DNA of 64,000 bases, taken from the IMG/VR virus record IMGVR_UViG_3300049460_000128, positions 62,001 through 126,000 of that record; one strand, written 5' to 3'. Numbering within the stretch: position 1 is the stretch's first letter; the number at the start of each line of letters is the position of its first letter. Shown here in pieces: positions 21,081 to 40,699 of this stretch. The notes beneath the pieces were generated by a model, which searched no databases, was not told where the DNA came from, and was given only the letters and a program-made list of their open reading frames with translations. A program made the translations under genes and the position numbers.

Positions 21081-21965
21081 GTGGTTATGGACTGGATGCG
21101 GTTTTTACCGTGTGATCGAACGGCAAAGATTCCACGACAGTTAATTGAGTTGCCCCGGTGCGAGCTGGGGCAATCTCCTTTGGAGCTAGCCATTCAGGCG
21201 GTCAATGATATTGTGGCCAAGTATCCAGCCCCCTATACCTTGATGTTGAGTGGTGGCATTGATAGTCAGGCGATGTTATATGCTTGGGTGAAAGCTGGAG
21301 TTGAGTTTAATACCTTGACGTTTCAATATGGTCATTACAACCTTCATGACATAGAAGCCCTTCAGAGATTTGTTGATGCATTGGCATTACCAATCACATT
21401 GACCTATATGGATTTCAACGTGATATCATTTTTGGAAAATGAATACGATCAGTATGCTACCAAGTATGACTGTTCGAGTCCCCAGATTTGCACTCATATA
21501 CGGTGTAGTGAATGGGTCAAAGAGGGTACTGTGGTGTTCAGTGGCAATTTCGTCATGAGTCCCACAAATGGTGGTCCCATGTTGAGTCATGCCATATTGG
21601 GAATAAGGCGATATGCCGAGATCGAGCAAAGATCGATCGTGCCATTTTTCTTCCTGCATACGCCACAGTTGGCATATTCGTTTATCCCGTATGAAATTCG
21701 GGGTGCAAAATCTGCTTATGAAATGAAGACTGGTATGTATAGGGCAGCAGGCTTTCCCATATTGCCGCAAGCTGACAAGTATACGGGATTTGAACGTATC
21801 AAGGATCAATATGACAACATTGACGTATCGCTGAAAACCAAACTTCAATATGCAGAAAAGCCCAGTACCAGGCCCTTTGATCTAATATACCGGTATCCAT
21901 ATGAAACTAAATTCAATGACCCAAGAGTAGATTTTATCTTCTCTTTCCTAAAGGATAAGCCATGA
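21081..21965 (+). CDS. PP-loop ATP pyrophosphatase (asparagine synthase/QueC-like superfamily), paralog A
   Basis: LMLSGGIDSQA PP-loop; shares YxCxSPQ and KYTGFExIK with 33744-34649. Confidence 0.75.
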   Translation: MVMDWMRFLPCDRTAKIPRQLIELPRCELGQSPLELAIQAVNDIVAKYPAPYTLMLSGGIDSQAMLYAWVKAGVEFNTLTFQYGHYNLHDIEALQRFVDALALPITLTYMDFNVISFLENEYDQYATKYDCSSPQICTHIRCSEWVKEGTVVFSGNFVMSPTNGGPMLSHAILGIRRYAEIEQRSIVPFFFLHTPQLAYSFIPYEIRGAKSAYEMKTGMYRAAGFPILPQADKYTGFERIKDQYDNIDVSLKTKLQYAEKPSTRPFDLIYRYPYETKFNDPRVDFIFSFLKDKP

Positions 21966-23545
21966 ACTATATTATAGACTTTGAACCACATGTTAGTGCT
22001 GTGCAGATCAGCCAATACATGACTGACAATAATCTGACTGTGTTGTCAGTCTATGATCATTTTGAACACGTCTACGTTGTCACTGGTGCCATTCCACCAA
22101 AGACTGATGCAGTTGCGTCCGTTGTGATCGATGACACACATGCCATTAAACTGTTGGATGTAGTGCCGATTACCGACGATGCCCCTGAAATTACGTTTGA
22201 TCATGACGATCAAAATTGGTGGAAAGTAGTAAGCTTGATTCAAACTGATCTTGATGCGCCTACAACAACTATGAAACGCAAAGGTCATAGTGTTAACGTG
22301 TATCTGGTTGACAGCGGCATTACCGCATTGCATCCAGAATTTGCGGATTCTGATATCACAAACTTGTTCTCGGTGAATGGCACCTTTGACGATCTAACGG
22401 GTCATGGTACCGCCTTGGCGTCCTTGATCACTGGTAAGACTTGCAGTATTGCCGACCCAGCCCTGAAGGTTGTTAAGATCTTTGACAATAGTGGCAATGT
22501 CAAACAAAGCCAATTGTTGGCTGCAATGGATGCAATCATTGCTGATGTGGTGGCTAATCCAACCAAATTAGCAATTGCGAACATGAGTTGGGCAATTCCA
22601 CGTAATGAATATTTGGATGCCAAAATTCAATTGATGATTGATCGTGGTATCGTTGTTGTTGCGGCAGCGGGCAATAGTGGTTTGTCAATTGACGACGTTA
22701 CCCCAGCGGCCATTGATCAAGTGATCACGATTGGCGCGTATGACCAATCGTTCCACCCATGTGACTTCTCCAGCTATACTGGCACATCTGATCTGAACTA
22801 TACTGAGGGTGCTACCAACAATGGTGCATTGGATGGTTGGGCACCTGGTGAAAAGATCTACGTCGCCAATGTGAGTGGTGGCTACAGCTATGCGGTTGGT
22901 ACCAGTTTGTCGGCTGCTATCCATACTGCCATTTGTGCATATAATGGCATGCAGATGTTAGATGCTGATGGTGCCGTACTGACCTGTATCGAAAGCATTG
23001 TGACTGATACCAAAGCGATGTCATTGAGTCGTAAAGATTTGATGGTATATCCGGATAGCAAATATAATGACTCAGTCAACAAGGTGTCGACTTGTTTCAA
23101 TGTATTCACAGCTAGCCAGCGTGTCCCTAAACTGGTTGAGAATATTGCATTCACGGTCGGCATTCCAAACTGTCGTCGTTTGTTCCATCCATTGATGACT
23201 GCAAGTTATGAAGTATTGGGTGAAATCCCGGAAGGTCTGACTTTGTATCGTGGTATGCTTTATGGTTCGCCGACAACTGATCAAGTTGACTATGAATTGA
23301 AAACATTTGAAGTGGATGTTACCACTATGGATGGGCATACAATAAACCAGTTGGTGAATATTCTGATCAAGCAACCAGAATACGACCCGACCTTGTTGCC
23401 AGCGAATGATCCAGTATTGTCAGTCATGTACATGACTTGTTCTGGTTTCACATGTGGTAGCTGCGGTGGTAGTAATTCGTGTGGGTGCGGTAATACCAAA
23501 GCTGGTGGTTGCGAATGCCTGTGCCTGGGCTGCGATTGCCCGTAA
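21962..23545 (+). CDS. Subtilisin-like S8 serine protease with N-terminal prodomain and Cys-rich C-terminal tail
   Basis: Triad VDSG / GHGT / GTSLSAA plus AAAGN oxyanion Asn; 10 Cys in the last 35 aa. Confidence 0.9.
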   Translation: MNYIIDFEPHVSAVQISQYMTDNNLTVLSVYDHFEHVYVVTGAIPPKTDAVASVVIDDTHAIKLLDVVPITDDAPEITFDHDDQNWWKVVSLIQTDLDAPTTTMKRKGHSVNVYLVDSGITALHPEFADSDITNLFSVNGTFDDLTGHGTALASLITGKTCSIADPALKVVKIFDNSGNVKQSQLLAAMDAIIADVVANPTKLAIANMSWAIPRNEYLDAKIQLMIDRGIVVVAAAGNSGLSIDDVTPAAIDQVITIGAYDQSFHPCDFSSYTGTSDLNYTEGATNNGALDGWAPGEKIYVANVSGGYSYAVGTSLSAAIHTAICAYNGMQMLDADGAVLTCIESIVTDTKAMSLSRKDLMVYPDSKYNDSVNKVSTCFNVFTASQRVPKLVENIAFTVGIPNCRRLFHPLMTASYEVLGEIPEGLTLYRGMLYGSPTTDQVDYELKTFEVDVTTMDGHTINQLVNILIKQPEYDPTLLPANDPVLSVMYMTCSGFTCGSCGGSNSCGCGNTKAGGCECLCLGCDCP

Positions 23546-23559
23546 TTCTCTAGGAACAT

Positions 23560-24879
23560 ATGGATATTAGTGTTATTGGCGGCGGTTATGTGGGCGTAAT
23601 CACCGCCATTTCCTTGGCTCAAATGTATGATCACAAGGTGATTGTAGTTGAACCTGACGAAGAAAAATTAGCCCATCTTCAACGTGGCTTGATGCCATTT
23701 CATGAACCATATTCTGAGCCTGTACTCCAGAGTATGGTTTACCGTAGTAGGCTGATGTTTGTGCCTGCACTCACGAGTCAATTTGGAACCATTCAGATCA
23801 TTGCTGTGGGGACTCCTGCCAAGCAGGATGGTTCAACTGACCTCACCCAAGTATTTGATGCTGCGACTACGATTGCTCGTTTGATGGATCAAGACACCAT
23901 CATTGCAATCAAATCAACGGTGCCGGTTGGCACTTGCGAGAAGATTGAGCAATTGATCAGCCATATCTTGATTGAACGTGGAGTCGTGTATATGTGGGAA
24001 GTCATCAGCAATCCTGAATTTTTGAGCCAAGGTCGTGCGATGGCGGATGCTCGTTCGCCTGATCGAATTATCATTGGTGCCAATACGTCATTTGGGCGTT
24101 TATATGGCAAAGTATTCCAGCACTCAAGTGCCATTGAATACGTGAGTCAAAAAGCTGGCGAGATGATCAAGTACATGTCAAATGCCATTCTGGCTACTAA
24201 AATTTCAATCATGAATGAAGCAGCGGCGTTTGCTGAGCATCATGGTATTGACATCATGGAAGTGGTTGATGGTGTTGGACGAGATGAACGAATTGGAATG
24301 TCGCATTTGACTCCAGGCATTGGATATGGTGGGTCCTGCTTACCAAAAGATGTCAGTAGCTTGCTTCACCAAGGACGCGAAGCCAATACACCATTCACTG
24401 TTTTGGAGACAGTTAGCGCGATTAATAATGATCAACACAGTCAGCTGTGTAAAAAGGTCATACGACGTTTTGGTGACGATCTCGTCAATCTCCGGGTCGG
24501 TATTTGGGGTGTATCTTTCAAACGTGATACCGATGATATGCGGAATGCCAAGTCGATTCCAATCATCAAGTTTTTACTCGAGCGTGGTGCCACTGTTGTA
24601 TTGCATGATCCCAAAGCAGTTTTCACTTGCATGGACATTATGGATACTGTATTATCAGCTGAACAAGTGAACCGTCTTTCGTTTAACATGGACAAGATGG
24701 TTGTTGCAACGAATGTTGATGCCTTGTTGTTGTTGAGTGACTGGGAAGAATATGACAATATTGATACCATGCGCTTACTGGGCATTATGAAACAACCATG
24801 TTTGTTTGATGGGCGTAATTTCTGGCAACGAGATTACATGATCCAAGAAGGTTTCGAATATCACGCTATAGGACGATAA
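23560..24879 (+). CDS. ugd: UDP-glucose 6-dehydrogenase
   Basis: IGGGYVG NAD site, IAVGTP, KSTVPVG, SNPEFL.QG, GIGYGGSCLPKD, FKRDTDDMR, FDGRN. Confidence 0.92.
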   Translation: MDISVIGGGYVGVITAISLAQMYDHKVIVVEPDEEKLAHLQRGLMPFHEPYSEPVLQSMVYRSRLMFVPALTSQFGTIQIIAVGTPAKQDGSTDLTQVFDAATTIARLMDQDTIIAIKSTVPVGTCEKIEQLISHILIERGVVYMWEVISNPEFLSQGRAMADARSPDRIIIGANTSFGRLYGKVFQHSSAIEYVSQKAGEMIKYMSNAILATKISIMNEAAAFAEHHGIDIMEVVDGVGRDERIGMSHLTPGIGYGGSCLPKDVSSLLHQGREANTPFTVLETVSAINNDQHSQLCKKVIRRFGDDLVNLRVGIWGVSFKRDTDDMRNAKSIPIIKFLLERGATVVLHDPKAVFTCMDIMDTVLSAEQVNRLSFNMDKMVVATNVDALLLLSDWEEYDNIDTMRLLGIMKQPCLFDGRNFWQRDYMIQEGFEYHAIGR

Positions 24880-27510: not shown

Positions 27511-28086
27511 ATGTCAATCTGGAGCGTAGATGTAGAATCTGACGGCCCTTGCCCCGGCAAGCACTCGATGATTAGTTTTGGGATGGTGCGAGTTGATGAT
27601 CAACTTACTACCACGTTTGGTGGCCGCCTCAAGCCAATTAGCGATATTTGGGTACCTGATGCCTTAGCGGTGTCTGGATTCACCCGCGAGGATACACTGT
27701 TGTTTGATGACCCTGCGGTTGTCATGCAGCAAGCAGCAGACTTCATTGCTGCAAATAATGTTGGGGATCGTCCAGTTTTCATTTCCGATAACAACGGATA
27801 CGATTGGATGTTCATGCACTATTATTTCCACATGTATTTGAATCACAATCCATTTGGTTGGAGTTCACGCCGCATTGGTGACTTCTACTGTGGCTTGCGT
27901 AAGAATTTCCGGGCAAGTGGTCGTGACTGGCACAAATTCCGTAAGACCCGTCACACACATGATCCGGTCGATGATGCAAAGGGCAACGCTGAAGCACTCG
28001 TGGGTATGTGTCACAAGTGGCAAATTGAATTGCCTGGTGTCACCCTGCAACCATTAACCAATCCAGTTCAACCAAGGCAAAAATGA
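27511..28086 (+). CDS. DEDDh 3'-5' exonuclease
   Basis: DVESDGP (ExoI), SDNNGYDW (ExoII), HDPVDDA (ExoIII). Confidence 0.85.
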   Translation: MSIWSVDVESDGPCPGKHSMISFGMVRVDDQLTTTFGGRLKPISDIWVPDALAVSGFTREDTLLFDDPAVVMQQAADFIAANNVGDRPVFISDNNGYDWMFMHYYFHMYLNHNPFGWSSRRIGDFYCGLRKNFRASGRDWHKFRKTRHTHDPVDDAKGNAEALVGMCHKWQIELPGVTLQPLTNPVQPRQK

Positions 28087-28901
28087 ATCAAGAACAAAAA
28101 CGAATGCAGGCACAGATTATCGCAGCATTGGGCGTTCAGCCGGTGATCGATCCTGTATTGGAGATCATCAAACGTGTGGGTTTCCTCGCGTCGGCGCTGC
28201 GTGCTGCAAACAAAGAATCCTATATCCTGGGTATAAGCGGTGGCGTCGATTCGACGACCTCCGGTCGCCTGGCAGTTCTGGCCTGTGAACAACTCCGCGG
28301 CCTGGACTATCACGCACAGTTCATCGCTGTGCGTTTGCCGTACGGCGAGCAACGTGACGAAGCAGATGCGCAACGTGCGCTTGACTTCATCAAGCCCCAC
28401 AAAGTGATCACCGTGAACATCAAGCCGGCTGTCGATGCGATCATGGCGTCCATGGATCTGGCCGGCTTGACTGACAAGCAGATCGACTTCCTGAAAGGCA
28501 ATGTGAAAGCGCGTCAGCGCATGATCGTGCAATATGCACTCGCGGGTCAGTACAATGGCCTGGTGATCGGCACCGATCATGCCAGCGAAGCACTGATGGG
28601 CTTCTTCACCAAGCACGGCGATGGCGCGGCCGACATTGTGCCGAAAGCCACGCTGGAAAAAGAGCAAGTCCGTGAAGTAGCGGCTGAGTTGGGTGCGCCT
28701 TCTGAGCTGGTTGGCAAACCACCAACTGCTGACCTGGAAGACCTGAATCCAGGTTTGCTGGACGAAGTTGCGTATGGCGTAACCTATGCGACGATCAGCA
28801 AATTCCTGCGCGGTCTGGACATCAGCGAAAACGATGCCGCAATCATCATCAAGCAATACTACAGTACCGCGCACAAGCGTAGTCTGGCTCCTGGTATCTG
28901 A
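28083..28901 (+). CDS. nadE: NH3-dependent NAD+ synthetase
   Basis: LGISGGVDST, AVRLPYG.Q.DE.DA, GNVKARQRM..QY, GTDHASE...GFFTK.GDGAAD, PTADLED. Confidence 0.93.
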   Translation: MNQEQKRMQAQIIAALGVQPVIDPVLEIIKRVGFLASALRAANKESYILGISGGVDSTTSGRLAVLACEQLRGLDYHAQFIAVRLPYGEQRDEADAQRALDFIKPHKVITVNIKPAVDAIMASMDLAGLTDKQIDFLKGNVKARQRMIVQYALAGQYNGLVIGTDHASEALMGFFTKHGDGAADIVPKATLEKEQVREVAAELGAPSELVGKPPTADLEDLNPGLLDEVAYGVTYATISKFLRGLDISENDAAIIIKQYYSTAHKRSLAPGI

Positions 28902-29994: not shown

Positions 29995-30445
29995 GATCAT
30001 GTTTGAAGCTGCAAAACAAGAAGAGCGAGAGTTGATGAATGCTCGCATTTGGGAAGATGAAACCAAGCATCGTTTCCAATGGGCACTCATTAGTGTCTTT
30101 CCCTGCAAGGTGAATGGTGACACTGGCTGGCGTCACCATATTGAGAAGCTATTGGGACCTGAAGGTCAGGAATGGGTGCTTGGTAATTATCAAGGCTACA
30201 TCAAACGAGCAGCCGATTATGAGTTTACAACGCAGATGGAATGGTGGGATGAACCAGCCATGCGTTGTATTGTGATCTACTGCGATCACACGCTTGACTC
30301 CATCCAGGTACTTGAGCGATTGATCGATGGTGATAAAAGCAACTTCACACCATCATTATTGCTTGGATTCAAATCACCGCAATACCTTGATGGTGAGCCT
30401 TGGCAAGATCACATCATCACCAAGACCTTGTTCATGGGGTCTTGA
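29987..30445 (+). CDS. Hypothetical protein
   Basis: 152-aa ORF with IVIYCDH motif. Confidence 0.65.
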   Translation: MNKIMFEAAKQEERELMNARIWEDETKHRFQWALISVFPCKVNGDTGWRHHIEKLLGPEGQEWVLGNYQGYIKRAADYEFTTQMEWWDEPAMRCIVIYCDHTLDSIQVLERLIDGDKSNFTPSLLLGFKSPQYLDGEPWQDHIITKTLFMGS

Positions 30446-31259
30446 ACTCCGATTCGTATTCTTCAACGAATCTATGATGTCCCATCATGTTGATCATCTG
30501 GGTAGCCCAAGATTGATCTCTGTCTGGATGAGCTTGCCAATTGATCTTCACCTTAGCAAAGCCATTATTATTCCCAGTCCACAAATCATAAAATATTCCC
30601 TTGGGCGCACTCGCACCTGAGGTTGCCAATACCACTTTAGTTCGCCCGGTGGACAAACATGGTTGTATGTTTGTCCAAAATTCTTCCATCGGGCTGTGTG
30701 AAATGAAACCCATGCTATCGATATACAGAGATGATATCGTATGCCCCCGCCCGCAAGTGTTAGATGCCACCGCAAAATGGATAGATGAACCATTGTCAAA
30801 CTCAATGGCCTGTTTGTTGTTCATTAGAATCTTAGGATAGATGCCTAACAGATGGTGATGCATGAATTCAATTCGTCTACGATGCTCTTGCGTCATCGCG
30901 TAGGTACGATCAACCATGAATATTTTTCGATTAGGCTGTCGTAGGGCATCCCACAAAGCACTAGCGCTGAGCATTGATGTGGTACCAAGTTGACGTCCTG
31001 ATTGGATGATCACTCGATCGTTCTTTTGGATGATATCAAGGGCGGCGGTCTGGTAGTCGTGTACCTGGAATGGGATTGCACCCTTTATAGGATGTTGAGT
31101 GAAGCAGTTTGCCATAAAGAGTGGCAAACTTTCCAGTTGATCACTGATGAGCAGATAGGCTTCTATCTTGCTTGCACAAACTATCAGTTCGTCAATGGCT
31201 ACGGTTGGGAATAATTCTCGAGCTTTAGAGAGTGCTCGCTCTTTGATGTCAATATTCAT
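30432..31259 (-). CDS. Terminase large subunit ATPase-domain paralog with degenerate Walker motifs and no nuclease domain
   Basis: QHPIKG.IP, GRQLGTT, LYIDSMGF, EFW..IQP.L.TG, W..HPDRD..W...RF.EEYESEF all match TerL at 92-1675. Confidence 0.85.
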   Translation of the reverse strand: MNIDIKERALSKARELFPTVAIDELIVCASKIEAYLLISDQLESLPLFMANCFTQHPIKGAIPFQVHDYQTAALDIIQKNDRVIIQSGRQLGTTSMLSASALWDALRQPNRKIFMVDRTYAMTQEHRRRIEFMHHHLLGIYPKILMNNKQAIEFDNGSSIHFAVASNTCGRGHTISSLYIDSMGFISHSPMEEFWTNIQPCLSTGRTKVVLATSGASAPKGIFYDLWTGNNNGFAKVKINWQAHPDRDQSWATQMINMMGHHRFVEEYESEFKTP

Positions 31260-33036: not shown

Positions 33037-33136
33037 GCGGATCAGTGGGCTTAACCTTGGCCACCCGTTCATGACTGTGCTGTTGACCCAGTGCCAGTTT
33101 GATCGTCGATAAATATGGCACCATTATGGGTACGTT

Positions 33137-33760
33137 ATGACAATATCAGATTTAATCGTTAATTTTGGAGATGTGATTCAATTACGGGATCAAGGCTTTG
33201 ATATACCCAAAATGCAACGTGTGTTGGATGCAAGTGCTGAATGGAAGCAATATAATCCACGTAAGCCAATCAATCGATTTGGTCTATCTATCACATCTGC
33301 TGATGGCGGCTATTCAGGGGTCCCTGACCTAGACTCGTTGCGCGAGTACAATACGCTCAACGATACCGCATTCAACGAGCGCAGCTTCCGAACCAGAACT
33401 TCAATTTGTGATGAACTTGAGTTGCATCCTTTTTTGGATTTGTGGAAGCTGTGGTTAGGTCGATCACACTTTTTGCGGATGGATGCCGGTGGTTTCTTTC
33501 CACCACATCGTGACAATGGATTGACATTTCCACCGAACACTATTCGAATTCTGGTGCCAATTCGTTGGCAGAAGAATCATGCTGTTTGGATACAAGATGG
33601 TAAAATACTGCATCTGGAAGAAGGTCAGGCGTATTTCATCAACACCATGAAAGAACATTCGATCTTCTCGTATCAGGATAACTCCATATTGATGGTGCTG
33701 AATGTGGCAGTAAGTTCTGAGACGATATTGCAGGTAGCACAGAATGCAAAAGTTCTTTGA
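33137..33760 (+). CDS. 2OG-Fe(II) oxygenase (aspartyl/asparaginyl beta-hydroxylase-like)
   Basis: FFPPHRD (HxD), RILVPI, YFINTMKEHS (distal His); TAAATA upstream. Confidence 0.8.
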   Translation: MTISDLIVNFGDVIQLRDQGFDIPKMQRVLDASAEWKQYNPRKPINRFGLSITSADGGYSGVPDLDSLREYNTLNDTAFNERSFRTRTSICDELELHPFLDLWKLWLGRSHFLRMDAGGFFPPHRDNGLTFPPNTIRILVPIRWQKNHAVWIQDGKILHLEEGQAYFINTMKEHSIFSYQDNSILMVLNVAVSSETILQVAQNAKVL

Positions 33761-34649
33761 TGACGATTGGCTGACGTTCCAGGTTGACTATGATGGACTC
33801 ACGGTAGGTCAGTCCGCATTGATATGGAAAATTGCTGACGACATCGGAATGTCAGCAGACGTCGGAATCAGTCGTATGGTCGACGGAATTAAAAAAATGC
33901 AGCTGGGCATCAACCCAGTCGTATCGTTGAGTGGTGGGGTGGATAGTCAAGCGGTATGCTTGCTGCTCCGTGCAGCCAATATCGATTTCAAGATAGCTAT
34001 CATGCAATATGAAAATGATCTCAACGATATGGATGTCTCGAGTGCGGTCAGCTTCTGTGAAACAAAAGGGTTCAACTACGAGATAATCAAATTCAATGTT
34101 ATCCCATTCCTCACCCAGGAACTTTCAGTATATGTTGCACTGTATGAATGTCCTTCACCACAGTTTGCAGTTCACTTCAAGTTTTATGAAATGTTGATGA
34201 CACGTGGTGCGTCATCTATCCTTGCAGGTGGTAGTGCTCCATATTGGCTCAAAGATCGTTTGGTGTATCCCATCACCATATCACAAAACGCATGGACGGT
34301 ATTTGCCCGCAAAAACGATTTCAATCTATATGGAAACGTGCTGGGTTGGAGCCCGGATATTGCTATACCACTTATTAAGAACTCACCAAACGTCAATGGA
34401 TATGGTGAGACTCTGACTGGTAGATACGCATCTAAGATCGCCGGTATGCTTGCGGTTGGGCTTGATGTTATCGCACAGCCCAACAAATATACAGGGTTTG
34501 AAAAGATCAAACAACTATTTGCCCAGCACACGGGTGATCCACTATTCTTTGACAAATCGTTCCGCTATCGGTTTTTCAGAACACATCCTGATTTAGCTGG
34601 CGTATTGCTGCCCAACCTACCGTTCGAGACCGCAATCAAAACTCTATGA
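33744..34649 (+). CDS. PP-loop ATP pyrophosphatase, paralog B
   Basis: VSLSGGVDSQA; YECPSPQ and KYTGFEKIK shared with 21081-21965. Confidence 0.75.
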   Translation: MQKFFDDDWLTFQVDYDGLTVGQSALIWKIADDIGMSADVGISRMVDGIKKMQLGINPVVSLSGGVDSQAVCLLLRAANIDFKIAIMQYENDLNDMDVSSAVSFCETKGFNYEIIKFNVIPFLTQELSVYVALYECPSPQFAVHFKFYEMLMTRGASSILAGGSAPYWLKDRLVYPITISQNAWTVFARKNDFNLYGNVLGWSPDIAIPLIKNSPNVNGYGETLTGRYASKIAGMLAVGLDVIAQPNKYTGFEKIKQLFAQHTGDPLFFDKSFRYRFFRTHPDLAGVLLPNLPFETAIKTL

Positions 34650-35313
34650 TTTCAAAATTAGGTAAAGATGCGTCGTTCGATATCAAGATGTCTTCGCCTA
34701 AATTATGTTGACTAGTATATGACACAGTTAAGATGAGATCATTTTCATCTGGTACAGATCTGATCAGGATTTTCTTTTTGGTGGTATCCCATGCTACCGT
34801 CTCTTGATTGTGCATCGTCATATAATCGTCTACTTGAAAAGCGACAGGCCAGAATTCTGAAACGTGTTCACCATTCATATACTTGCTGATTCGTTCTTTG
34901 ATCAGGAAACGTCCAGGTACAGTTAGTGATAATTTATCCTGGTTATCAAGTATGATAGGCCAACCCAACACATGCTTGAATTCAACTGCATCATCCACCA
35001 CATCATCGGCGAAAAATACATTGGTCTTTTTTGCATTGGCTTTTAAACGAATCAACACACCAGACAGCCACATATCGTAATTGGCCAAGCATGAGTATTC
35101 CAAGAGACCAGGTGCGTATATGACTTTCTTACCAGTAGCTGTTGCCACTTCTTCTGCAAAAAAGAGGCTTCGTTTATCGTGACGACTTATATTACCAGAT
35201 ACCAATATGTAATCTGGCTTTTCCGTGCTACTAAGTGAAACTACTTCGGAGATTTGTTTGTCTGCAAATTCAATCAACTTGAGTTGTAGGTTTCTGATCA
35301 CCAGTAGTTTCAT
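34636..35313 (-). CDS. Degenerate calcineurin-like metallophosphoesterase-fold protein
   Basis: PDYILVSGNIS and IYAPGLLEY resemble the GD and GNHE motifs, with ligands substituted. Confidence 0.5.
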   Translation of the reverse strand: MKLLVIRNLQLKLIEFADKQISEVVSLSSTEKPDYILVSGNISRHDKRSLFFAEEVATATGKKVIYAPGLLEYSCLANYDMWLSGVLIRLKANAKKTNVFFADDVVDDAVEFKHVLGWPIILDNQDKLSLTVPGRFLIKERISKYMNGEHVSEFWPVAFQVDDYMTMHNQETVAWDTTKKKILIRSVPDENDLILTVSYTSQHNLGEDILISNDASLPNFEIIEF

Positions 35314-35371
35314 ATGGATGGTTTCTTAGTTTATAAATAAAGTATTATTTATTTTAACCACCGAGAACACT

Positions 35372-36706
35372 ATGGCCTATAACACCAATAATTTCATAAA
35401 ATCCACCACATTTATGGACTTAACTAGTTCGGCACTGTGGGCTCAGAATCGTATTGTGAATCGATATCGCCCATTGATTGCAAATCCTTTGATGGCAAAG
35501 CTGTCCAGCGATACTCCGGTAGAAGTCATTGTAATGGACTCTGGAATTCAACGCAATCATGTTGAATTCGCGCAAGCAACAATTGAAGACCTGTATTTTG
35601 TGCCAAACCTCCTGAACATCAGCGATGAGACTGGACACGGTACTGCAATGGCGTCTTTGATTGCTGGTGTAACTGTTGGGGTTGATCCAACTGCAACCTT
35701 GAAAATTGTCAAAATCTTTGGGGCAAGCTACGATACTTCCGAGGCTGAAATATTAGATGCCTTTGATGCAATCATTGCCTATCATGCATCAACACCAAAC
35801 GTCACGAAGATTTTGAACATGAGCTGGGCAATTCCTGCCAACGATTCAGTTAAAATCAAACTCAAGATGCTATCAGACGCTGGCGTGATATTGGTGGCTG
35901 CTGCGGGCAACTATCCTCAGTGCATTGATGACACTCTGCCGGCAGGTTTCGCCGGAGCAGTCACGGTTGCTGGATCGAAGCAATCTGACGAAGAATACAC
36001 GCAAGTATATGGTGTCAACAAGAAGATTGACATCTATGCACCAGCCGAACAGGTTTGTGTGGCGGCATTTGAAGACAACGTTGGTTATGCGACCACTGAC
36101 GGGTCATCTAGTTCGGCGGCTTTGGCTTCTGGTGTATTGAGCCTCACGCGCAAAACATTTGCCCATACCGTATCTAGTGATGATGTGAAACTGGCCACGA
36201 TGCAAAACGGTACAATTGGTGCCTTATTGGTGAATGACCGTGTGAGCTTTACTGAAAACCGTTTGTTGTATCGTCCTGATGTGAACTCTGTGCCTAGCGA
36301 TCAAGACTATTATGCAGGTAACATCACAATTGGTTCAGGTGCGGTGATCAACGTATCGTTGAATACGTTTATGCCAATCGAACAGTTTGAAAACATCTTT
36401 GACAAGTTGACGTTTGCTCTTGAGGTTGATTCTGAGTTTAGTTCATCAATTAGTGTTGGCCCACAGGGCGCCCTGACTATCGTTGACCCAGTATCGTACG
36501 TTCTTCCGCAAGACAGTGTGGTGAAAAAGGTGTCGTTCTATGTAACAGCCTCGACCACGACTATCACTATGACATCGCCAAAGATTCACTACTTCTTGTC
36601 ATCAATTGATAGTACAGATCAGGATATTGCAGCCCTTACCGATCAATTGAATTCACAAACATATTTGATCCCATTGACATTGAGTCAACTTAATAACTTC
36701 AAATAA
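35372..36706 (+). CDS. Subtilisin-like S8 serine protease, paralog 2 (no Cys tail)
   Basis: MDSG / GHGT / AAAGN / DGSSSSAA; TATAAATA upstream at ~35332. Confidence 0.85.
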   Translation: MAYNTNNFIKSTTFMDLTSSALWAQNRIVNRYRPLIANPLMAKLSSDTPVEVIVMDSGIQRNHVEFAQATIEDLYFVPNLLNISDETGHGTAMASLIAGVTVGVDPTATLKIVKIFGASYDTSEAEILDAFDAIIAYHASTPNVTKILNMSWAIPANDSVKIKLKMLSDAGVILVAAAGNYPQCIDDTLPAGFAGAVTVAGSKQSDEEYTQVYGVNKKIDIYAPAEQVCVAAFEDNVGYATTDGSSSSAALASGVLSLTRKTFAHTVSSDDVKLATMQNGTIGALLVNDRVSFTENRLLYRPDVNSVPSDQDYYAGNITIGSGAVINVSLNTFMPIEQFENIFDKLTFALEVDSEFSSSISVGPQGALTIVDPVSYVLPQDSVVKKVSFYVTASTTTITMTSPKIHYFLSSIDSTDQDIAALTDQLNSQTYLIPLTLSQLNNFK

Positions 36707-36709
36707 GTT

Positions 36710-37471
36710 ATGATTGAACCAACCAAAGTTGCGACCGTCAAATGCTCATTTCTCCTTAACGAAGTTGACGTATTTGAAATCAAAAACTTCTTAACTGACG
36801 CCGAGTTTGCCCGTATTCGAGAGTTCATCGAAGCGTATATTGGGCATACGGGTGTAAGTCAAAATGGTGACCGTCGAACCATCGTTGATGACGATGGGCG
36901 ACGTGTTTTCACTCTTGAATATTATGGTAACCGTCCGTTTCGTCTAGTGTGGAATTTGGGCCATACTCCAAAATACTGGCAGCAAAATCCATCAACCATC
37001 AATGAGTTTTTCAACAAGGCACTACGGGATAATGTTCATCCTTTGGTATATCGTTATTTGATGAAATGCAAGAATGAAATTGCTTTGTTCCAAGGTGATT
37101 GGCTACCCATCAGATGTGTCATCAATGTGTTGGGAAATGGGCTGTGCCTTGATATACACGGTGATGGTAATTTTCACGAAGTTGACTTGGAAAAACCCGC
37201 ACAGGTTGTGAGCACAACTCTGTATATGCGATTGCCCGCTGCTGGTGGTAAATTGTTTTTCTCTGATGGGTTCATGATGACCCCTGAAGAAAATAGCTTA
37301 GTCATGTTTGACGGTCAAGCGGTGTTACATGGGGTATCTGAAACACGAGATCCCGATCCAAATTTCATCCGCGTCGCCATGACAACCAGATGGTGCCGTA
37401 TTCAAGACCTGCTATTCCCAACAGTGACACCAATGCTGTATCCCCCAACTGATTTTGACGCGGGGATGTGA
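36710..37471 (+). CDS. 2OG-Fe(II) oxygenase (prolyl-hydroxylase-like)
   Basis: DIHGD (HxD), GGKLFF, LVMFDG...HGV, R. Confidence 0.8.
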   Translation: MIEPTKVATVKCSFLLNEVDVFEIKNFLTDAEFARIREFIEAYIGHTGVSQNGDRRTIVDDDGRRVFTLEYYGNRPFRLVWNLGHTPKYWQQNPSTINEFFNKALRDNVHPLVYRYLMKCKNEIALFQGDWLPIRCVINVLGNGLCLDIHGDGNFHEVDLEKPAQVVSTTLYMRLPAAGGKLFFSDGFMMTPEENSLVMFDGQAVLHGVSETRDPDPNFIRVAMTTRWCRIQDLLFPTVTPMLYPPTDFDAGM

Positions 37472-38067
37472 TGCACAATCCGCTAAACATAAATCAAGCT
37501 TTCTTATTTGATCTGTTGAGTCCAGATGGTGAGTCAGTCATCGTGGAAGATATTCCACAGGAGGTGGCTGAATGCTTTATAGCCGAAACGTTAAAGTATG
37601 CTGAAGATGAACCACCACAAGACTCAACATGGCCACGAACTAGGAAGCAATCGAAAGTTCAGATTGTACAGAATACCGATTACCTGAAGGTCGCTGCCCA
37701 CATAGCACAACATGCAATTTTGAACAACTGGAAAATCAATGGCGAGATGTCAGTGTCTGACTTTGGTTTCTTTTGCTATAAGGCCAATTCGCACTTTCCC
37801 GCGCATTGTGATAATGCCAATATTCTCGATGATGGTACCGTTGAGTTCTTTTCTGAACATCGCAAAATAACGTGTATAACCTATTTGAACGATTATGCGA
37901 TTGATTACGAGGGTGGCGAGCTTTGCTTCCCCGAGCTTGATTTGGAGTTCAAACCAAGAAAATACAGTATGATCATTTTCCCGTCTAATGTATATTTTAG
38001 GCATGCGGTAAACCTCATAACCAAAGGCGAACGAACCATATTCGCTTTTTTCCTGGATGTAAAATAA
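37468..38067 (+). CDS. 2OG-Fe(II) oxygenase (P4H/PKHD-like)
   Basis: FPAHCD, YLND...DYEGGEL.F, IIFPSN..FRHAV..ITKGER. Confidence 0.9.
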   Translation: MMHNPLNINQAFLFDLLSPDGESVIVEDIPQEVAECFIAETLKYAEDEPPQDSTWPRTRKQSKVQIVQNTDYLKVAAHIAQHAILNNWKINGEMSVSDFGFFCYKANSHFPAHCDNANILDDGTVEFFSEHRKITCITYLNDYAIDYEGGELCFPELDLEFKPRKYSMIIFPSNVYFRHAVNLITKGERTIFAFFLDVK

Positions 38068-38654
38068 TGACTTTTGATAACCTACTTGCTGACTCTGGTC
38101 CGAGGATTGGCGTTTTCGTATCAGGTGGCCTTGATAGTGCTTTTCTCCTTTACCTGTTGATGCGTGAAAATCAAACGCTTGGTAAAAAGATAGTGGTCTT
38201 CACCGTTCCCAAAGCAGACGGCAGTGTTCATTATGCCTCCAAGGTAGTATCGCATATTGCCAACATGTTGAATGTGGAACCTCCACAAATGCTATTGGCG
38301 GGCGATCCCAACTTATCCCACGACATCATCGTATTCAGTGCATGGTGGTCAGTGTCGATGCGAAACCTGGTTGATACTATTTTCTTAGCTGACAACATTA
38401 CTCCCGATCTGGAGCTTTCTGGTCTTGCCCCAGTTCGTTCACGAGTCACTCATCTTATGGTGAGACAGCCACTATTCGATTACACGAAGGACATTTTGGT
38501 GAATAGCATTTTTCAGTATGGAGTCGAGTCATTGATTGACGTTACGCATACTTGCACGGAGCGCGCCCGTGGCCGCTGCAAAATGTGTTGGCAATGTAAT
38601 GAACGCGCATGGGCATTCACACATGCGAACCGTGTTGACACTGGCGATGAGTAA
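38067..38654 (+). CDS. QueC-like PP-loop protein (7-cyano-7-deazaguanine synthase family)
   Basis: VSGGLDSA PP-loop; C-terminal THTC-x7-CKMCWQC-ER Zn motif. Confidence 0.75.
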   Translation: MTFDNLLADSGPRIGVFVSGGLDSAFLLYLLMRENQTLGKKIVVFTVPKADGSVHYASKVVSHIANMLNVEPPQMLLAGDPNLSHDIIVFSAWWSVSMRNLVDTIFLADNITPDLELSGLAPVRSRVTHLMVRQPLFDYTKDILVNSIFQYGVESLIDVTHTCTERARGRCKMCWQCNERAWAFTHANRVDTGDE

Positions 38655-39255
38655 CGATATTCTGCTTCCTGATTTGTTGGATCCAGTAGCACACAATGAA
38701 CTAGCATTCGATGCTGACCGGTTGCTATCTGAGTTTCAACAAATGGCGAGTATGATTCAACACAGTGCTTGGTATAGGATCAGTATCAACTATTCATATT
38801 ATGACGACGACAATGCACCAATCGATACCGTATTTTCTCCTAGCTGTGAGAAACTCACAACCGAGTTTGATAATTTGGAATCCCATAAGACCTTACAGTT
38901 GATGCAGTCGTGGAATAGTGATAACATCCTGAAACCCTTTCAGGGTTCATACACTGCGTCAGTTGTTCAAAGGTTGGATTCATATTTCCGACAATATGGC
39001 GAACGTGTCACTATAGCCAAATTCACAATCTTGCATAGTCGTGAATGCTATGTGGTTCATAGCGATTTTATGCAATATCGATATCATGTCCCGGTAAAGA
39101 CAAACGAACACGTTTACTTTATGGCTGACCGAGTGCTGATTCAAATGCAACAGGCTGGCAAGCTGTACCGCATAAGAACGGATAACCAGCACACAGTTAT
39201 GAATGCCGGCAACGAATCCAGAATTCACTTGATCATAGACACATGCAAACTCTAA
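38647..39255 (+). CDS. 2OG-Fe(II) oxygenase (Asp/Asn beta-hydroxylase-like)
   Basis: YVVHSD, RYHVPVKTN, RTDNQHTVMN, RIHLI. Confidence 0.75.
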   Translation: MSNDILLPDLLDPVAHNELAFDADRLLSEFQQMASMIQHSAWYRISINYSYYDDDNAPIDTVFSPSCEKLTTEFDNLESHKTLQLMQSWNSDNILKPFQGSYTASVVQRLDSYFRQYGERVTIAKFTILHSRECYVVHSDFMQYRYHVPVKTNEHVYFMADRVLIQMQQAGKLYRIRTDNQHTVMNAGNESRIHLIIDTCKL

Positions 39256-39875
39256 ACATATTCAAATTAGACACTCAATTGGTATTTGATGCCAATCGTT
39301 TATGTTCTGAATTCCATCACTTCACAGCAACCATACCCAGAAGAGCCAGTCAACCTCAACGATATTGTGTCAACTACAGTGAAATGGATGTTGATGATGA
39401 AATGAGTTTGATTGCATTTACGAGTGGGAAAAGCCCAGCATTGGAAGAGTTGAAACAAACTATATTGGGTGATTACGAGTATCAATACGACGACCCCGCC
39501 AGTATAGCGTTCTTGCAAACGTGGACACCAGAGAATTTGTTAAAGGTGTATCACGGTACCTATACGGCCGACGTAGTCAAGCAAGTGGCTGAATGGGTAA
39601 GGGCCCGAGGTGGCATTTTGGGACCAATCCAATATTTTGAAATTCCTCCTTGCTACTGCTACATCTATCATCACGATAAGCCATCATTTTTCAACCTCCA
39701 CATACCAATTCAAACTCAGGTTGGTAATTTCTTCATTGCTGAAAATGAGCTGGGAACCATGCTTGATGCTGGACACCTATATGCTCTGAACACTACTGGT
39801 TATCACACCGCTCTGAATTCGTCCAAGCAGACACGAATTCATCTCGTCTTTACCGTTCTGAATAATTCCCTGTAA
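39243..39875 (+). CDS. 2OG-Fe(II) oxygenase (Asp/Asn beta-hydroxylase-like), tandem paralog
   Basis: YIYHHD, LHIPIQT, LNTTGYHTALN, RIHLV. Confidence 0.75.
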   Translation: MQTLNIFKLDTQLVFDANRLCSEFHHFTATIPRRASQPQRYCVNYSEMDVDDEMSLIAFTSGKSPALEELKQTILGDYEYQYDDPASIAFLQTWTPENLLKVYHGTYTADVVKQVAEWVRARGGILGPIQYFEIPPCYCYIYHHDKPSFFNLHIPIQTQVGNFFIAENELGTMLDAGHLYALNTTGYHTALNSSKQTRIHLVFTVLNNSL

Positions 39876-39954: not shown

Positions 39955-40395
39955 TCAAATCAATGGGTTTGGATCAATTGGCGGTGTTGCCTTGGCAGCT
40001 CGCCGTTTAGCCGCACGTTCAGTTGCTTCGCTGGATGTTTTGGCTGTGTGGCAAGGATGACACAGTGTCTGGAGATTACCCATCTGCCAGAAAGACAAGT
40101 CACCCTGTGCTTCGATTAACGGCTTGATGTGATCCATATGCCATTTTGGAAGACCTTTGCGGGCACAAATGGTACCACACGATTTGCATTTGCCTTGGTC
40201 GCGTCTCCAGACAGCCTGGCGTGTTTTCGTGGGCCAGAAGAGCAGTTTGTACTCGGCGACGCATTTGACGTGCCAACGCGCTTTGCTGACTTTACCGCGA
40301 GCAGTGTTGCCGATAGCTTCATTGCACCAACGGCATGTGCCCAAGGGTGCAGTTTCAAAGTGAGGGGGAAGGGGAGGGATACGATGTTTACTCAT
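39955..40395 (-). CDS. HNH endonuclease with N-terminal Zn-finger-like CxxC
   Basis: CRWC...HVKC; RRDQGKCKSCG...MDHIKPL...NLQTLCHPCH; start MSKHRIP. Confidence 0.85.
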   Translation of the reverse strand: MSKHRIPPLPPHFETAPLGTCRWCNEAIGNTARGKVSKARWHVKCVAEYKLLFWPTKTRQAVWRRDQGKCKSCGTICARKGLPKWHMDHIKPLIEAQGDLSFWQMGNLQTLCHPCHTAKTSSEATERAAKRRAAKATPPIDPNPLI

Positions 40396-40405
40396 ACGGA
40401 TATTT

Positions 40406-40699
40406 ATGACTGATATACGGCTAGTGCCATTTACAACAACAATTACAATACGGCAGTGTGCAGCGAACGTATGGCATTCTGAAGTGAAGGAACAACATGC
40501 AACCAGATTTTCCGTTTCGTATTTTCGATTCCACCACACGCTCGCTGAAGTGAGAACATATTACGAGAATGAATACAAGATCAAGTTGACTAAGGTTCAG
40601 TATATCTTGGAAGCAGACGGCGACACCAAGACGTTAGAAGATGATGCTGACTGGGTTATGGCAACATTGACATACCGCCCATTAAAGGATCAGGCATGA
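40406..40699 (+). CDS. Small protein, DDxDW family
   Basis: HTLAEVRTYY; ends LEDDADWVMATLTYRP. Confidence 0.75.
   Translation: MTDIRLVPFTTTITIRQCAANVWHSEVKEQHATRFSVSYFRFHHTLAEVRTYYENEYKIKLTKVQYILEADGDTKTLEDDADWVMATLTYRPLKDQA

What the first reader, a model, noticed from the sequence alone, without database searches (positions are those of the whole stretch)
33114..39875. Late-expressed tailoring cluster: S8 protease, two PP-loop enzymes and five 2OG-Fe(II) oxygenases
Seen: eight co-oriented, mostly coupled enzyme genes. They are a beta-hydroxylase-like oxygenase, a PP-loop enzyme (SGGVDS), a subtilase (intact D/H/N, GSS nucleophile motif), two prolyl-hydroxylase-like oxygenases, a QueC-like enzyme and two tandem beta-hydroxylase-like oxygenases. 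TAAATA boxes at ~33108 and ~35333 match those before the structural genes. Known: a protease plus an ATP-dependent adenylating enzyme plus 2OG hydroxylases is the enzyme logic of RiPP clusters (e.g. lasso cyclases are asparagine-synthetase homologues). Inference: this is a phage-encoded post-translational modification pathway acting late on a virion protein or peptide (surface or fibre decoration), rather than scattered metabolic genes.
Basis: partly seen in the sequence, partly recalled or inferred. Interest (0 to 1): 0.82.

Follow-up and report, generated by a model that had tools for sequence, protein, structure and literature searches.

The report
Phage subtilase–ligase–oxygenase protein-modification module
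An uncultured soil jumbo phage has a late-gene cluster whose core, a subtilisin-like protease paired with an ATP-dependent carboxylate-activating enzyme and flanked by hydroxylases, recurs in about 30 other uncultured phage contigs and looks like an undescribed protein- or peptide-modifying machine with an unknown target.

Summary
Window 33137-39875 carries eight tightly packed + strand enzyme genes: three AspH-like and two prolyl-hydroxylase-like 2OG oxygenases, two PP-loop enzymes and an S8 subtilase. All keep intact catalytic motifs. T4-type late-promoter boxes precede g1 and g3, as they do the sheath and portal genes.

The genes are not scattered metabolic genes. The 301-aa PP-loop protein folds as a stand-alone asparagine-synthetase/beta-lactam-synthetase-type domain. 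An S8 protease lies within about 2 kb of it in 32 of 34 viral loci, usually adjacent; the other two loci are cut by contig ends. The pair is predicted to bind (ipSAE 0.69, best control 0.00). AspH-like and P4H-like genes flank the pair in this subtype.

A diverged second pair sits at 21087-23545. Its S8 ends in a Cys-rich tail that is swapped like a cassette between relatives, and is replaced in some by self-cleaving Hint or S74 domains.

Best reading (confidence about 0.5): a late protein/peptide modification module combining cleavage, carboxylate adenylation and amide formation, and hydroxylation. It probably acts on the subtilase's own C-terminal tail or on a virion appendage protein. The substrate and the chemistry are inferred, not shown. 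The QueC-like gene and the last oxygenases are only loosely linked. I found no published description.

The parts
33108..33115 (+). T4-type late-promoter-like box GATAAATA, ending 21 nt before the g1 ATG
33137..33760 (+). g1: AspH-like (Asp/Asn beta-hydroxylase-type cupin) 2OG-Fe(II) oxygenase, 207 aa. It overlaps g2 by 17 nt.
   Evidence: It belongs to a viral AspH-like family. Its HxD...H triad is conserved in 11 homologues. It lies directly upstream of the PP-loop gene in window, L004 (twice), L007, L008 and L015-L018.
33744..34649 (+). g2: stand-alone asparagine-synthetase-type PP-loop adenylating enzyme, 301 aa, with SGGVDSQ and no glutaminase domain
34636..35313 (-). gM: minus-strand 225-aa gene between g2 and g3. 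It is a metallophosphoesterase-like fold with degenerate metal-binding motifs, probably a pseudo-enzyme. Its own ATAAATA box is at 35352-35346.
   Evidence: It is 64% identical to its counterpart in L004. L016 has a positional counterpart.
35332..35339 (+). Exact T4 late-promoter consensus TATAAATA, ending 32 nt before the g3 ATG
35372..36706 (+). g3: S8 subtilase, 444 aa. Residues about 45-290 are a proteinase K/PCSK9-like catalytic domain, residues about 300-410 a beta-rich domain, and the last about 32 aa (36608-36703) a conserved tail ending in Lys.
   Evidence: Pfam E 8.8e-23. The triad is invariant. The tail is 81% identical between window and L004 against 65% for the body.
36710..37471 (+). 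g4: P4H-like 2OG-Fe(II) oxygenase, 253 aa. It follows the S8 gene in 6 type A loci.
37468..38067 (+). g5: 2OG-FeII_Oxy_3 (prolyl-4-hydroxylase-like) oxygenase, 199 aa
   Evidence: the HxD, distal His and Arg are read from the sequence
38067..38654 (+). g6: small QueC-like PP-loop enzyme, 195 aa, with SGGLDS and a C-x7-C-x2-C-x2-C zinc motif
38647..39255 (+). g7: Asp_Arg_Hydrox-family 2OG oxygenase, 202 aa, coupled to g6 by an 8-nt overlap
39243..39875 (+). g8: AspH-like 2OG oxygenase, 210 aa, placed in the same family cluster as g7
21087..21965 (+). p1: paralogous type B PP-loop enzyme, 28% identical to g2. An ATAAATA box lies at 21048-21054.
21962..23545 (+). p2: paralogous type B S8 subtilase, 527 aa, 39% identical to g3 in the catalytic domain. 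A conserved junction (LPANDPVLSVMYMT, 23396-23437) is followed by a 35-aa Cys-rich tail (23438-23542).

Best explanation
The cluster is a virus-specific protein/peptide post-translational modification module that carries late-promoter-like boxes.

Its core is a two-enzyme unit. One part is an S8 subtilase (g3). The other is a stand-alone asparagine-synthetase-type PP-loop enzyme (g2), which would adenylate a carboxylate with ATP and pass it to an amine, giving an amide, an isopeptide or a lactam. Because g2 has no glutaminase domain, the nitrogen would have to be free ammonia or a substrate amine.

In this 'type A' version the core is flanked by an AspH-like oxygenase (g1) and a P4H-like oxygenase (g4). 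These would hydroxylate Asp/Asn and Pro or similar residues of the same substrate. A second small PP-loop (QueC-like) enzyme with AspH-like partners (g6-g8), plus g5, are looser add-ons.

The most likely substrate is the C-terminal tail of the subtilase itself or of a virion appendage protein. In the paralogous 'type B' pair of the same genome (21087-23545), the subtilase carries a conserved junction followed by an exchangeable Cys-rich tail.

Shown here: gene content, intact catalytic motifs, promoter-like boxes, co-conservation, the fold of g2, and a predicted g2-g3 complex. Inferred: the chemistry, the order of steps, the substrate and the timing.
For: (1) Gene linkage. g2-type PP-loop genes have an S8 gene within about 2 kb, usually directly adjacent, in 32 of 34 viral loci. 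These span 22-100% identity and both gene orders. The two exceptions are cut by contig ends. S8 genes are otherwise rare in phages: 42 of 50,697 records match g3.

(2) Type A companions. g1-like genes lie directly upstream of the PP-loop gene and g4-like genes directly downstream of the S8 gene. A 2OG oxygenase is present in 10 of 11 type A loci.

(4) Predicted complex. S8 plus PP-loop gave ipSAE 0.74, 0.69 and 0.03 (median 0.69) against a best control of 0.00. In the tool's calibration, 58 of 80 solved complexes and 2 of 110 mismatched pairs reached that mark.

(5) Catalytic residues are conserved in all the enzymes (g5).

(6) Late-promoter-like boxes precede g1, g3, gM and p1, as they do the sheath and portal genes.

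(7) Type B tails. In 17 of 22 type B subtilases a conserved LPxDDPx[IVL]x[IV]xL junction is followed by a 35-45 aa tail with 6-11 Cys. Between L019 and L020 the body has dS 0.006 and the tail dS 0.54, which indicates cassette exchange. L035 and L040 carry a Hint domain there and L039 a Peptidase_S74 domain; both are self-cleaving C-terminal modules. The type A tail is more conserved than the body, 81% against 65%.

(8) Precedent. AS-like enzymes amidate, nitrilate or cyclise peptide carboxylates in RiPP pathways. PesC requires prior Asp beta-hydroxylation (PMC13060819).
Against: No substrate was identified, and no stand-alone precursor-peptide gene is conserved next to type A modules.

The predicted g2-g3 interface does not place the S8 tail in the PP-loop active site. 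One of the three complex runs failed (ipSAE 0.03).

There is no expression or proteome evidence for this phage: no RNA run was listed.

The nearest cultured relatives, Phosso and Atu_ph07, lack the PP-loop genes, so the module is not core to the lineage.

A more distant relative of the PP-loop family sits in a cellular-looking context with glycosyltransferases and radical SAM enzymes and no S8.

A UDP-glucose dehydrogenase lies next to the type B pair. That leaves room for a sugar-carboxylate substrate.
Confidence: 0.5

Rival explanations
1. Virion appendage protease plus assembly partner. The subtilases are structural, tail-fibre-associated enzymes or receptor-binding proteins. The PP-loop protein is mainly a bound assembly or maturation factor, like a fibre chaperone. 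The oxygenases are independent neighbours.
For: In Atu_ph07 and Phosso the S8 domain is part of a protein of about 1250-1290 aa in a tail-fibre gene block. Atu_ph07 gp329 was detected in virions, with 3 peptides, beside gp327 (tail fibre) and gp328. The L039 S8 ends in a Peptidase_S74 intramolecular-chaperone domain typical of fibres and spikes. Exchangeable C-terminal tips are typical of receptor-binding proteins. The L006 module abuts baseplate genes. The phage has its own S77 prohead protease, so the S8s are not needed for head maturation.
Against: The PP-loop motif and some 20 further residues are invariant across the family. That argues for catalysis rather than a purely structural role. 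g3 is only 444 aa and lacks fibre-like repeats. Similarity to gp329 is limited to part of the catalytic domain (32% over 158 aa). The strict positional conservation of g1 and g4 around the pair is left unexplained.
Confidence: 0.2
2. Small-molecule or glycan pathway. The AS-like enzymes amidate uronic-acid or other metabolite carboxylates, the oxygenases hydroxylate the same metabolite, and the product decorates capsule, LPS, DNA or virion glycans.
For: UDP-glucose/GDP-mannose-dehydrogenase-family genes lie next to the type B pair (23560-24879) and 4-5 kb upstream of the module in L004 and L007. L008 has an NDP-sugar epimerase/dehydratase nearby. A distant PP-loop relative sits among GT2 glycosyltransferases. 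From my own knowledge, not tested here: AsnB-like amidotransferases act on uronic acids in O-antigen pathways.
Against: This gives no role to the near-universally linked, catalytically intact protease, and does not explain the predicted protease-ligase complex. The dehydrogenase is not adjacent in most loci. No glycosyltransferase was detected among the window ORFs scanned.
Confidence: 0.1
3. Nucleic-acid modification. The QueC-like and PP-loop enzymes and the 2OG oxygenases modify phage DNA or tRNA, for example with 7-deazaguanine derivatives or by base hydroxylation.
For: g6 keeps the QueC PP-loop and four-Cys zinc motif. PHROG hits for g4 and g5 fall in families labelled 'DNA, RNA and nucleotide metabolism'. 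Many PP-loop enzymes act on tRNA, and TtuA and MnmA appear among the fold hits.
Against: g6 scores far below the QueC equivalog cut-off (24.9 against 150.3 bits). Its family profile is no closer to QueC (E 0.096) than to asparagine synthetase (7e-4) or the protein-modifying Cap9 (2.6e-3). No transglycosylase, QueD, QueE or FolE was found among the scanned window ORFs, and the window has no tRNA genes. g2's best structural matches are the AsnB/beta-lactam synthetase group. A protease has no place in such a pathway.
Confidence: 0.07
4. Chance assembly of unrelated auxiliary genes in a variable region, with no common pathway.
For: AspH-like and 2OG-FeII_Oxy_3 genes are very common in aquatic T4-like phages. 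AspH-like genes are core in pelagimyophages (PMC7029224). The viral AspH-like cluster that g1 joins has 475 members. The QueC-like family occurs in other enzyme-rich islands without S8. An HNH endonuclease flanks the cluster.
Against: The S8/PP-loop linkage holds in 32 of 34 loci across deep divergence and both gene orders. The g1-g2 and g3-g4 positions are conserved. The genes overlap as if translationally coupled. A complex is predicted.
Confidence: 0.05

Closest known systems
RiPP pathways that use asparagine-synthetase-like enzymes: lasso peptide cyclases, the TsrC/ScdTA C-terminal amidases, and the PesC nitrile synthetase of nitrilobacillins (PMC13060819)
   Same: An AS-type PP-loop adenylating enzyme works together with a protease and with Fe-dependent beta-hydroxylases on a genetically encoded peptide. 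In nitrilobacillins, Asp hydroxylation must precede the AS-like step. g2 shares the synthetase-domain fold.
   Different: g2 is only the synthetase domain (301 aa) and lacks the N-terminal glutaminase-like domain. The protease is an S8 subtilase rather than a lasso B-type cysteine protease. No RRE and no separate precursor gene were found. The hydroxylases are AspH/P4H-type 2OG enzymes rather than MNIO or HExxH enzymes. The host is a phage, and the candidate 'core peptide' is fused to the protease.
S8-domain virion proteins of Rak2/Atu_ph07-like jumbo phages (Atu_ph07 gp329; the Phosso 'S8 family peptidase')
   Same: They come from the same phage lineage (MCP 68-80% identical). They share an S8 catalytic domain with g3, at 32% identity including the N-terminal conserved region. 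They are virion proteins.
   Different: They are about 1250-1290 aa, lie in a tail-fibre block, and have no neighbouring PP-loop or oxygenase genes. g3 and p2 are 444 and 527 aa.
QueC and Cap9. QueC is 7-cyano-7-deazaguanine synthase. Cap9 is the type IV CBASS QueC-like enzyme in the deposited Cap9-CdnD complex with an NDG modification (PDB 9nto).
   Same: g6 has the PP-loop, the C-terminal four-Cys zinc site and a Cap9-like length (195 against 191 aa). Cap9 is the best single-sequence PDB match.
   Different: The similarity is very weak (E 0.03 to 0.003). No TGT/Cap10, CD-NTase or preQ0 pathway genes were seen in the window. The substrate is unknown.
Polymorphic C-terminal cargo systems and phage fibre tips (PT-HINT pretoxin domains, S74 intramolecular chaperones)
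   Same: A conserved body and junction are followed by an exchangeable C-terminal module. Hint and S74 domains occupy that position in some type B subtilases.
   Different: The body is an active-looking subtilase, always paired with a PP-loop enzyme. Most tails are 35-45 aa Cys-rich peptides with no recognised toxin or receptor-binding domain.

Membership tests
Peptidase S8 (subtilase) | Asp/His/Ser catalytic triad with the oxyanion Asn, in the subtilisin fold | tested here: met
   Pfam PF00082 E 8.8e-23. D56, H89, N180 and S246 are invariant in 12 homologues. Foldseek matches proteinase K and PCSK9 catalytic domains at E down to 5e-20.
PP-loop ATP pyrophosphatase, asparagine synthetase B / beta-lactam synthetase branch | SGGxDS PP-loop and the AsnB-type synthetase-domain fold | tested here: met
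Glutamine-dependent asparagine synthetase (AsnB proper) | N-terminal Ntn glutaminase domain | tested here: not met
   g2 is 301 aa. Only a short beta-hairpin precedes the PP-loop domain. No GATase domain was found by Pfam or NCBIfam.
Lasso peptide gene cluster | B-type transglutaminase-like leader peptidase with an RRE, and a full-length C cyclase | tested here: not met
   No such domains appear in any cluster gene. The protease is S8, and the AS-like enzyme lacks the N-terminal domain.
RiPP gene cluster (general) | A genetically encoded precursor peptide with a leader/core organisation next to the tailoring enzymes | tested here: inconclusive
   No conserved small precursor ORF lies next to type A modules. 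The candidates are the S8 C-terminal tails. Type B has a conserved junction plus a variable Cys-rich tail. Type A has a conserved Lys-terminated tail. Cleavage or modification was not testable here.
QueC (7-cyano-7-deazaguanine synthase) | Score above the equivalog cut-off, and a companion preQ0 pathway or transglycosylase | tested here: not met
   TIGR00364 scores 24.9 bits against a cut-off of 150.3. Only the C-terminal 60 aa match PF06508. No QueD, QueE, FolE or TGT was found among the scanned window ORFs. The PP-loop and four-Cys zinc motif are present.
2OG-Fe(II) oxygenase superfamily (g1, g4, g5, g7, g8) | HxD/E...H iron triad and a basic residue for the 2OG C5 carboxylate, on a DSBH fold | tested here: met
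   The triad is conserved in the g1, g4 and g7/g8 family alignments, with the Arg also conserved in g4 and g7/g8. For g5 the residues are read from its sequence. Pfam hits cover g5 and g7. Atlas structure and feature matches cover g1 and g4. g5 matches Bacillus P4H at E 0.007.
Asp/Asn beta-hydroxylase acting on EGF-like domains (AspH proper) | Activity on Asp/Asn within a Cys-rich EGF consensus | not testable with these tools
   Only family-level similarity is available: PF05118 for g7, and fold-level similarity for g1 and g8. Substrate specificity cannot be inferred.
T4-type late gene | A TATAAATA -10 element read by a gp55-type sigma factor, and late transcription | tested here: inconclusive
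   The motif and its position are met. No transcript data were available. A gp55 homologue was not looked for.

The most novel reading that the evidence does not exclude
Large environmental phages encode a new class of 'protease-borne' modified peptides. A subtilase carries its own exchangeable Cys-rich core peptide behind a conserved junction. A dedicated AS-type ligase bound to the protease amidates, cyclises or ligates the peptide. 2OG oxygenases hydroxylate it. The product is displayed on the virion or released at lysis as a host-range or competition factor. The type A module in this finding would be the non-Cys, oxygenase-rich branch of the same machinery.
Probability: 0.25. Interest if true: 0.9.

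Novelty: new variant of a known kind. Interest (0 to 1): 0.72.

Why it matters
Many aquatic and soil T4-like phages carry AspH-like and P4H-like oxygenases whose targets are still unknown. Here these oxygenases are tied by conserved synteny to a protease-ligase pair that is predicted to form a complex. That gives the first concrete place to look for their substrate: the subtilase tail or a virion appendage protein.

If the module modifies a protein or peptide, it would add an enzyme-installed, ATP-dependent covalent modification system to phage late functions. The PP-loop family has 272 representative clusters (each grouping proteins at 50% identity) at E 1e-30 or better in metagenomes. It is absent from the cultured phages searched and from the genomes scanned by pattern. 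The system would also provide stand-alone AS-type ligases with built-in substrates for enzymology. The exchangeable Cys-rich tails suggest a role in host interaction.

Tried and rejected
- Megablast of the cluster against 50,697 phage records found no match.
- tblastn of g2 and of p1 against phages found no match. g6 hit only Ralstonia phage RsoM2USA, where the neighbours are unannotated and had no Pfam hits.
- Single-protein scans of IMG/VR returned only the source contig. An alignment query was needed.
- The GTDB genome scan found no relative.
- No collagen-like GXY repeats, a possible P4H substrate, occur in the window.
- DUF6171, GNAT and HExxH companions of type B modules are absent from the window.
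- The 166-aa ORF upstream of p1 is not a 2OG oxygenase paralogue of g5.
- The sigma-70 promoter scan showed no enrichment.
- One RNA-run search listed none. Only the source rhizosphere DNA run holds the sequence.
- Literature searches for the gene combination, for DUF6171, and for jumbo phage plus S8 plus asparagine synthase found no description.
- Fold search of g3 did not identify its C-terminal domain.
- Pfam found nothing for the small + strand ORFs flanking the cluster.
- The lasso-peptide reading was rejected; see the membership test.

Full report
**Source and setting**

The window is positions 62001-126000 of IMG/VR contig IMGVR_UViG_3300049460_000128, which is 296.6 kb long. The only run that holds the sequence is a rhizosphere metagenome.

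The phage is a T4-type jumbo myovirus:
- The tail sheath, portal, major capsid protein and S77 prohead protease are all recognisable.
- The capsid protein is 80% identical to that of Sinorhizobium phage Phosso and 68% identical to that of Agrobacterium phage Atu_ph07.
- No phage record matches the cluster at the DNA level.

**Checking the observation**

Eight + strand genes, g1 to g8, lie at 33137-39875. Their junctions overlap by 1-17 nt or are 3 nt apart.

| Gene | Size | Assignment | Evidence |
|---|---|---|---|
| g1 | 207 aa | Viral AspH-like cupin | |
| g2 | 301 aa | PP-loop enzyme with SGGVDSQ | |
| g3 | 444 aa | S8 subtilase; D56, H89, N180 and S246 invariant | |
| g4 | 253 aa | Prolyl-hydroxylase-like 2OG oxygenase | |
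| g5 | 199 aa | Prolyl-hydroxylase-like 2OG oxygenase | |
| g6 | 195 aa | QueC-like, with PP-loop and four-Cys zinc motif | |
| g7 | 202 aa | AspH-like oxygenase | |
| g8 | 210 aa | AspH-like oxygenase | |

The iron triad is conserved in the family alignments of g1, g4 and g7/g8. For g5 it is visible in the sequence itself.

The promoter claim also holds. GATAAATA and TATAAATA precede g1 and g3. In the window, 11 of 16 ATAAATA sites end 14-32 nt before the ATG of a sizeable ORF on the same strand. These include the tail sheath and portal genes.

One correction is needed. A ninth gene (gM, 34636-35313) lies on the minus strand between g2 and g3 and has its own box. It is conserved in a relative. 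It looks like a metallophosphoesterase that has lost its metal-binding motifs. L016 has a positional counterpart.

**Are the genes linked?**

The g2 family is small by word-indexed search, at 19 proteins. A full profile search finds 272 representative clusters (each grouping proteins at 50% identity) at E 1e-30 or better.

I examined 34 loci:
- the two places in the window;
- four further metagenomic contigs;
- 28 of the 30 loci from the IMG/VR scan, leaving out the window's own contig and one duplicate.

An S8 gene lies within about 2 kb of the PP-loop gene in 32 of these, and is directly adjacent in most. The two exceptions, L022 and L033, are cut by contig ends. The linkage holds down to 22-28% identity and in both gene orders. 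S8 genes are otherwise rare in phages: 42 of 50,697 records match g3.

Two subtypes appear.

Type A is the subtype of this finding. It also occurs in L004 (twice), L006, L007, L008 and L014-L018. Its order is AspH-like gene, PP-loop gene, a minus-strand gene, S8 gene, then a g4-like oxygenase. A 2OG oxygenase is present in 10 of 11 type A loci.

Type B is present in the same window at 21087-23545. There p1 is 28% identical to g2, and p2 is 39% identical to g3 in the catalytic domain. Elsewhere, type B usually carries a small DUF6171-like zinc-ribbon gene (19 loci). A GNAT gene (13 loci) and an HExxH gene (9 loci) also recur, mostly with type B. None of the three is in this window.

The QueC-like g6 is followed directly by an AspH-like gene here, in L004 and in L010. 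It occurs in only 7 of 34 loci, and elsewhere it occurs without S8. I therefore treat g1-g4 as the core and g5-g8 as accessory.

**What the PP-loop partner is**

AFDB holds stand-alone 'asparagine synthetase domain' proteins of similar size, with TM 0.75.

g2 is therefore an AS-type carboxylate-adenylating domain without a glutaminase domain. This enzyme group makes amides, beta-lactams and lasso macrolactams. In recent RiPP work it also makes C-terminal amides and nitriles. There, the PesC step needs prior Asp beta-hydroxylation (PMC13060819).

**Do the two core enzymes work together?**

A complex prediction for g3 plus g2 gave ipSAE 0.74, 0.69 and 0.03, with a median of 0.69. The best control scored 0.00. 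In the tool's calibration, that mark was reached by 58 of 80 solved complexes and 2 of 110 mismatched pairs. My own alignments were used, so those counts hold only roughly.

The interface involves the conserved N-terminal segment of the S8 (residues 31-34), the end of its catalytic domain, its beta-rich domain and residues 433-434. On g2 it involves residues 91, 120-128 and 259-282. This supports binding but does not prove it. It does not place the tail in the ligase active site.

**Clues to the substrate**

The g3 catalytic domain is proteinase K/PCSK9-like. The phage already has a canonical S77 prohead protease, so the S8s are extra.

Type B subtilases have a conserved junction, LPxDDPx[IVL]x[IV]xL. 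In 17 of 22 it is followed by a 35-45 aa tail with 6-11 cysteines. Between L019 and L020 the gene bodies are almost identical (dS 0.006). The tails differ at both synonymous and non-synonymous sites (dS 0.54, dN 0.56). That pattern points to cassette replacement rather than point mutation.

In L035 and L040 the tail position is occupied by a Hint/intein-type domain. In L039 it is a Peptidase_S74 intramolecular chaperone. Both are self-cleaving C-terminal modules, and S74 is typical of phage fibres and spikes.

Type A tails are not Cys-rich. They end in Lys in 8 of 10 sequences. They are more conserved than the rest of the protein: 81% against 65% identity between the window and L004.

In the nearest cultured relatives the S8 domain is part of a protein of about 1250-1290 aa in a tail-fibre block. 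Atu_ph07 gp329 was found in the virion proteome (PMC6102473 supplement).

**Interpretation**

The best-supported reading is a protein/peptide modification module carrying late-promoter-like boxes. The S8 would cleave or hold the substrate. The AS-type enzyme would adenylate a carboxylate and form an amide bond. The AspH-like and P4H-like enzymes would hydroxylate nearby residues. The target would be the subtilase's own tail or a virion appendage protein.

The steps shown are gene content, motifs, linkage, fold and a predicted complex. The chemistry, the substrate and the timing are inferred.

The rivals are:
- a structural fibre protease with the PP-loop protein as an assembly partner;
- a sugar or small-molecule pathway, since a UDP-glucose-dehydrogenase-family gene lies beside the type B pair and near L004 and L007, and a distant family member sits among glycosyltransferases without S8;
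- nucleic-acid modification, which is weak because g6 is far below the QueC cut-off and no companion genes or tRNAs were found;
- chance co-location, which is refuted for g1-g4.

**Novelty**

The module is absent from cultured phages in the August 2025 INPHARED release. It was not found by a pattern-limited scan of GTDB genomes. I found no description of it in the searchable literature.

It works like RiPP tailoring systems that use AS-like enzymes, but it fails the membership tests for lasso clusters and for AsnB proper. I rate it a new variant of a known kind. There is a 0.25 chance that it represents a new class of protease-borne modified peptides in phages.

Noticed in passing
window 21087-23545: A second, diverged PP-loop plus S8 pair (type B) has its own late-promoter-like box at 21048. 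The S8 ends in a 35-aa tail with 10 Cys after a conserved junction. A UDP-glucose-dehydrogenase-family gene follows directly at 23560-24879.
   Followed up: yes
window 34636-35313 (-): This minus-strand gene inside the cluster resembles a metallophosphoesterase, but the DxH, GD and GNH(D/E) metal motifs read RNLQL, SGN and GLLE. It is probably a pseudo-enzyme. It is conserved in L004 and has a positional counterpart in L016.
   Followed up: partly
window 30432-31259 (-): This 275-aa ORF matches only the N-terminal ATPase part of the T4-type large terminase (Terminase_6N). No C-terminal nuclease part was found directly downstream, where a bona fide NAD synthase lies on the + strand instead. The terminase may be split or interrupted.
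   Followed up: no
window 28083-28901 (+): A genuine NH3-dependent NAD synthetase (PF02540, E 2.7e-56) is a third PP-loop enzyme in the window. It is unrelated to the module and probably serves NAD salvage.
   Followed up: no
window 39955-40539 (-): An HNH endonuclease gene lies immediately downstream of g8 on the opposite strand. It hints at mobility or a homing element at the edge of the cluster.
   Followed up: no
L035 1216-3378; L040 6234-8282; L039 5968-7848: These type B subtilases carry a Hint/intein-type domain (L035, L040) or a Peptidase_S74 intramolecular-chaperone domain (L039) where the others have the Cys-rich tail.
   Followed up: partly
L009 7345-7617, L020 7707-7934 and 17 further loci: A small DUF6171-like protein of 75-90 aa, with the Cys-rich motif CxxCE...CxxCGC...CP, sits between or after the type B S8 and PP-loop genes in 19 loci. 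A GNAT gene (13 loci) and an HExxH DUF6782-like gene (9 loci) also recur. No literature on DUF6171 was found.
   Followed up: partly
L004 7763-9313 and 20929-end; L007 7752-9299: Relatives carry a TROVE/Ro60-like plus vWA gene just upstream of the module. L004 also has a ribosomal protein L33 gene.
   Followed up: no
L001 (Ralstonia phage RsoM2USA 90121-90780): This is the only cultured phage with a homologue of the QueC-like g6 (31% identity). It is followed by a coupled 279-aa gene with no Pfam hit, and could serve as a laboratory handle for that family.
   Followed up: partly
L046 (Atu_ph07 gp327-gp329); L045 (Phosso): The nearest cultured relatives have an S8 domain inside a protein of about 1250-1290 aa in the tail-fibre block. 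Atu_ph07 gp329 was detected in virions by MS with 3 peptides.
   Followed up: partly
L042 3764-7005: A distant member of the PP-loop family sits in a cellular-looking contig. It follows a 745-aa polytopic membrane protein that looks spermidine-synthase-like (by eye; no Pfam hit on record), among GT2 glycosyltransferases and radical SAM genes, with no S8. This shows the family is not tied to S8 everywhere.
   Followed up: partly
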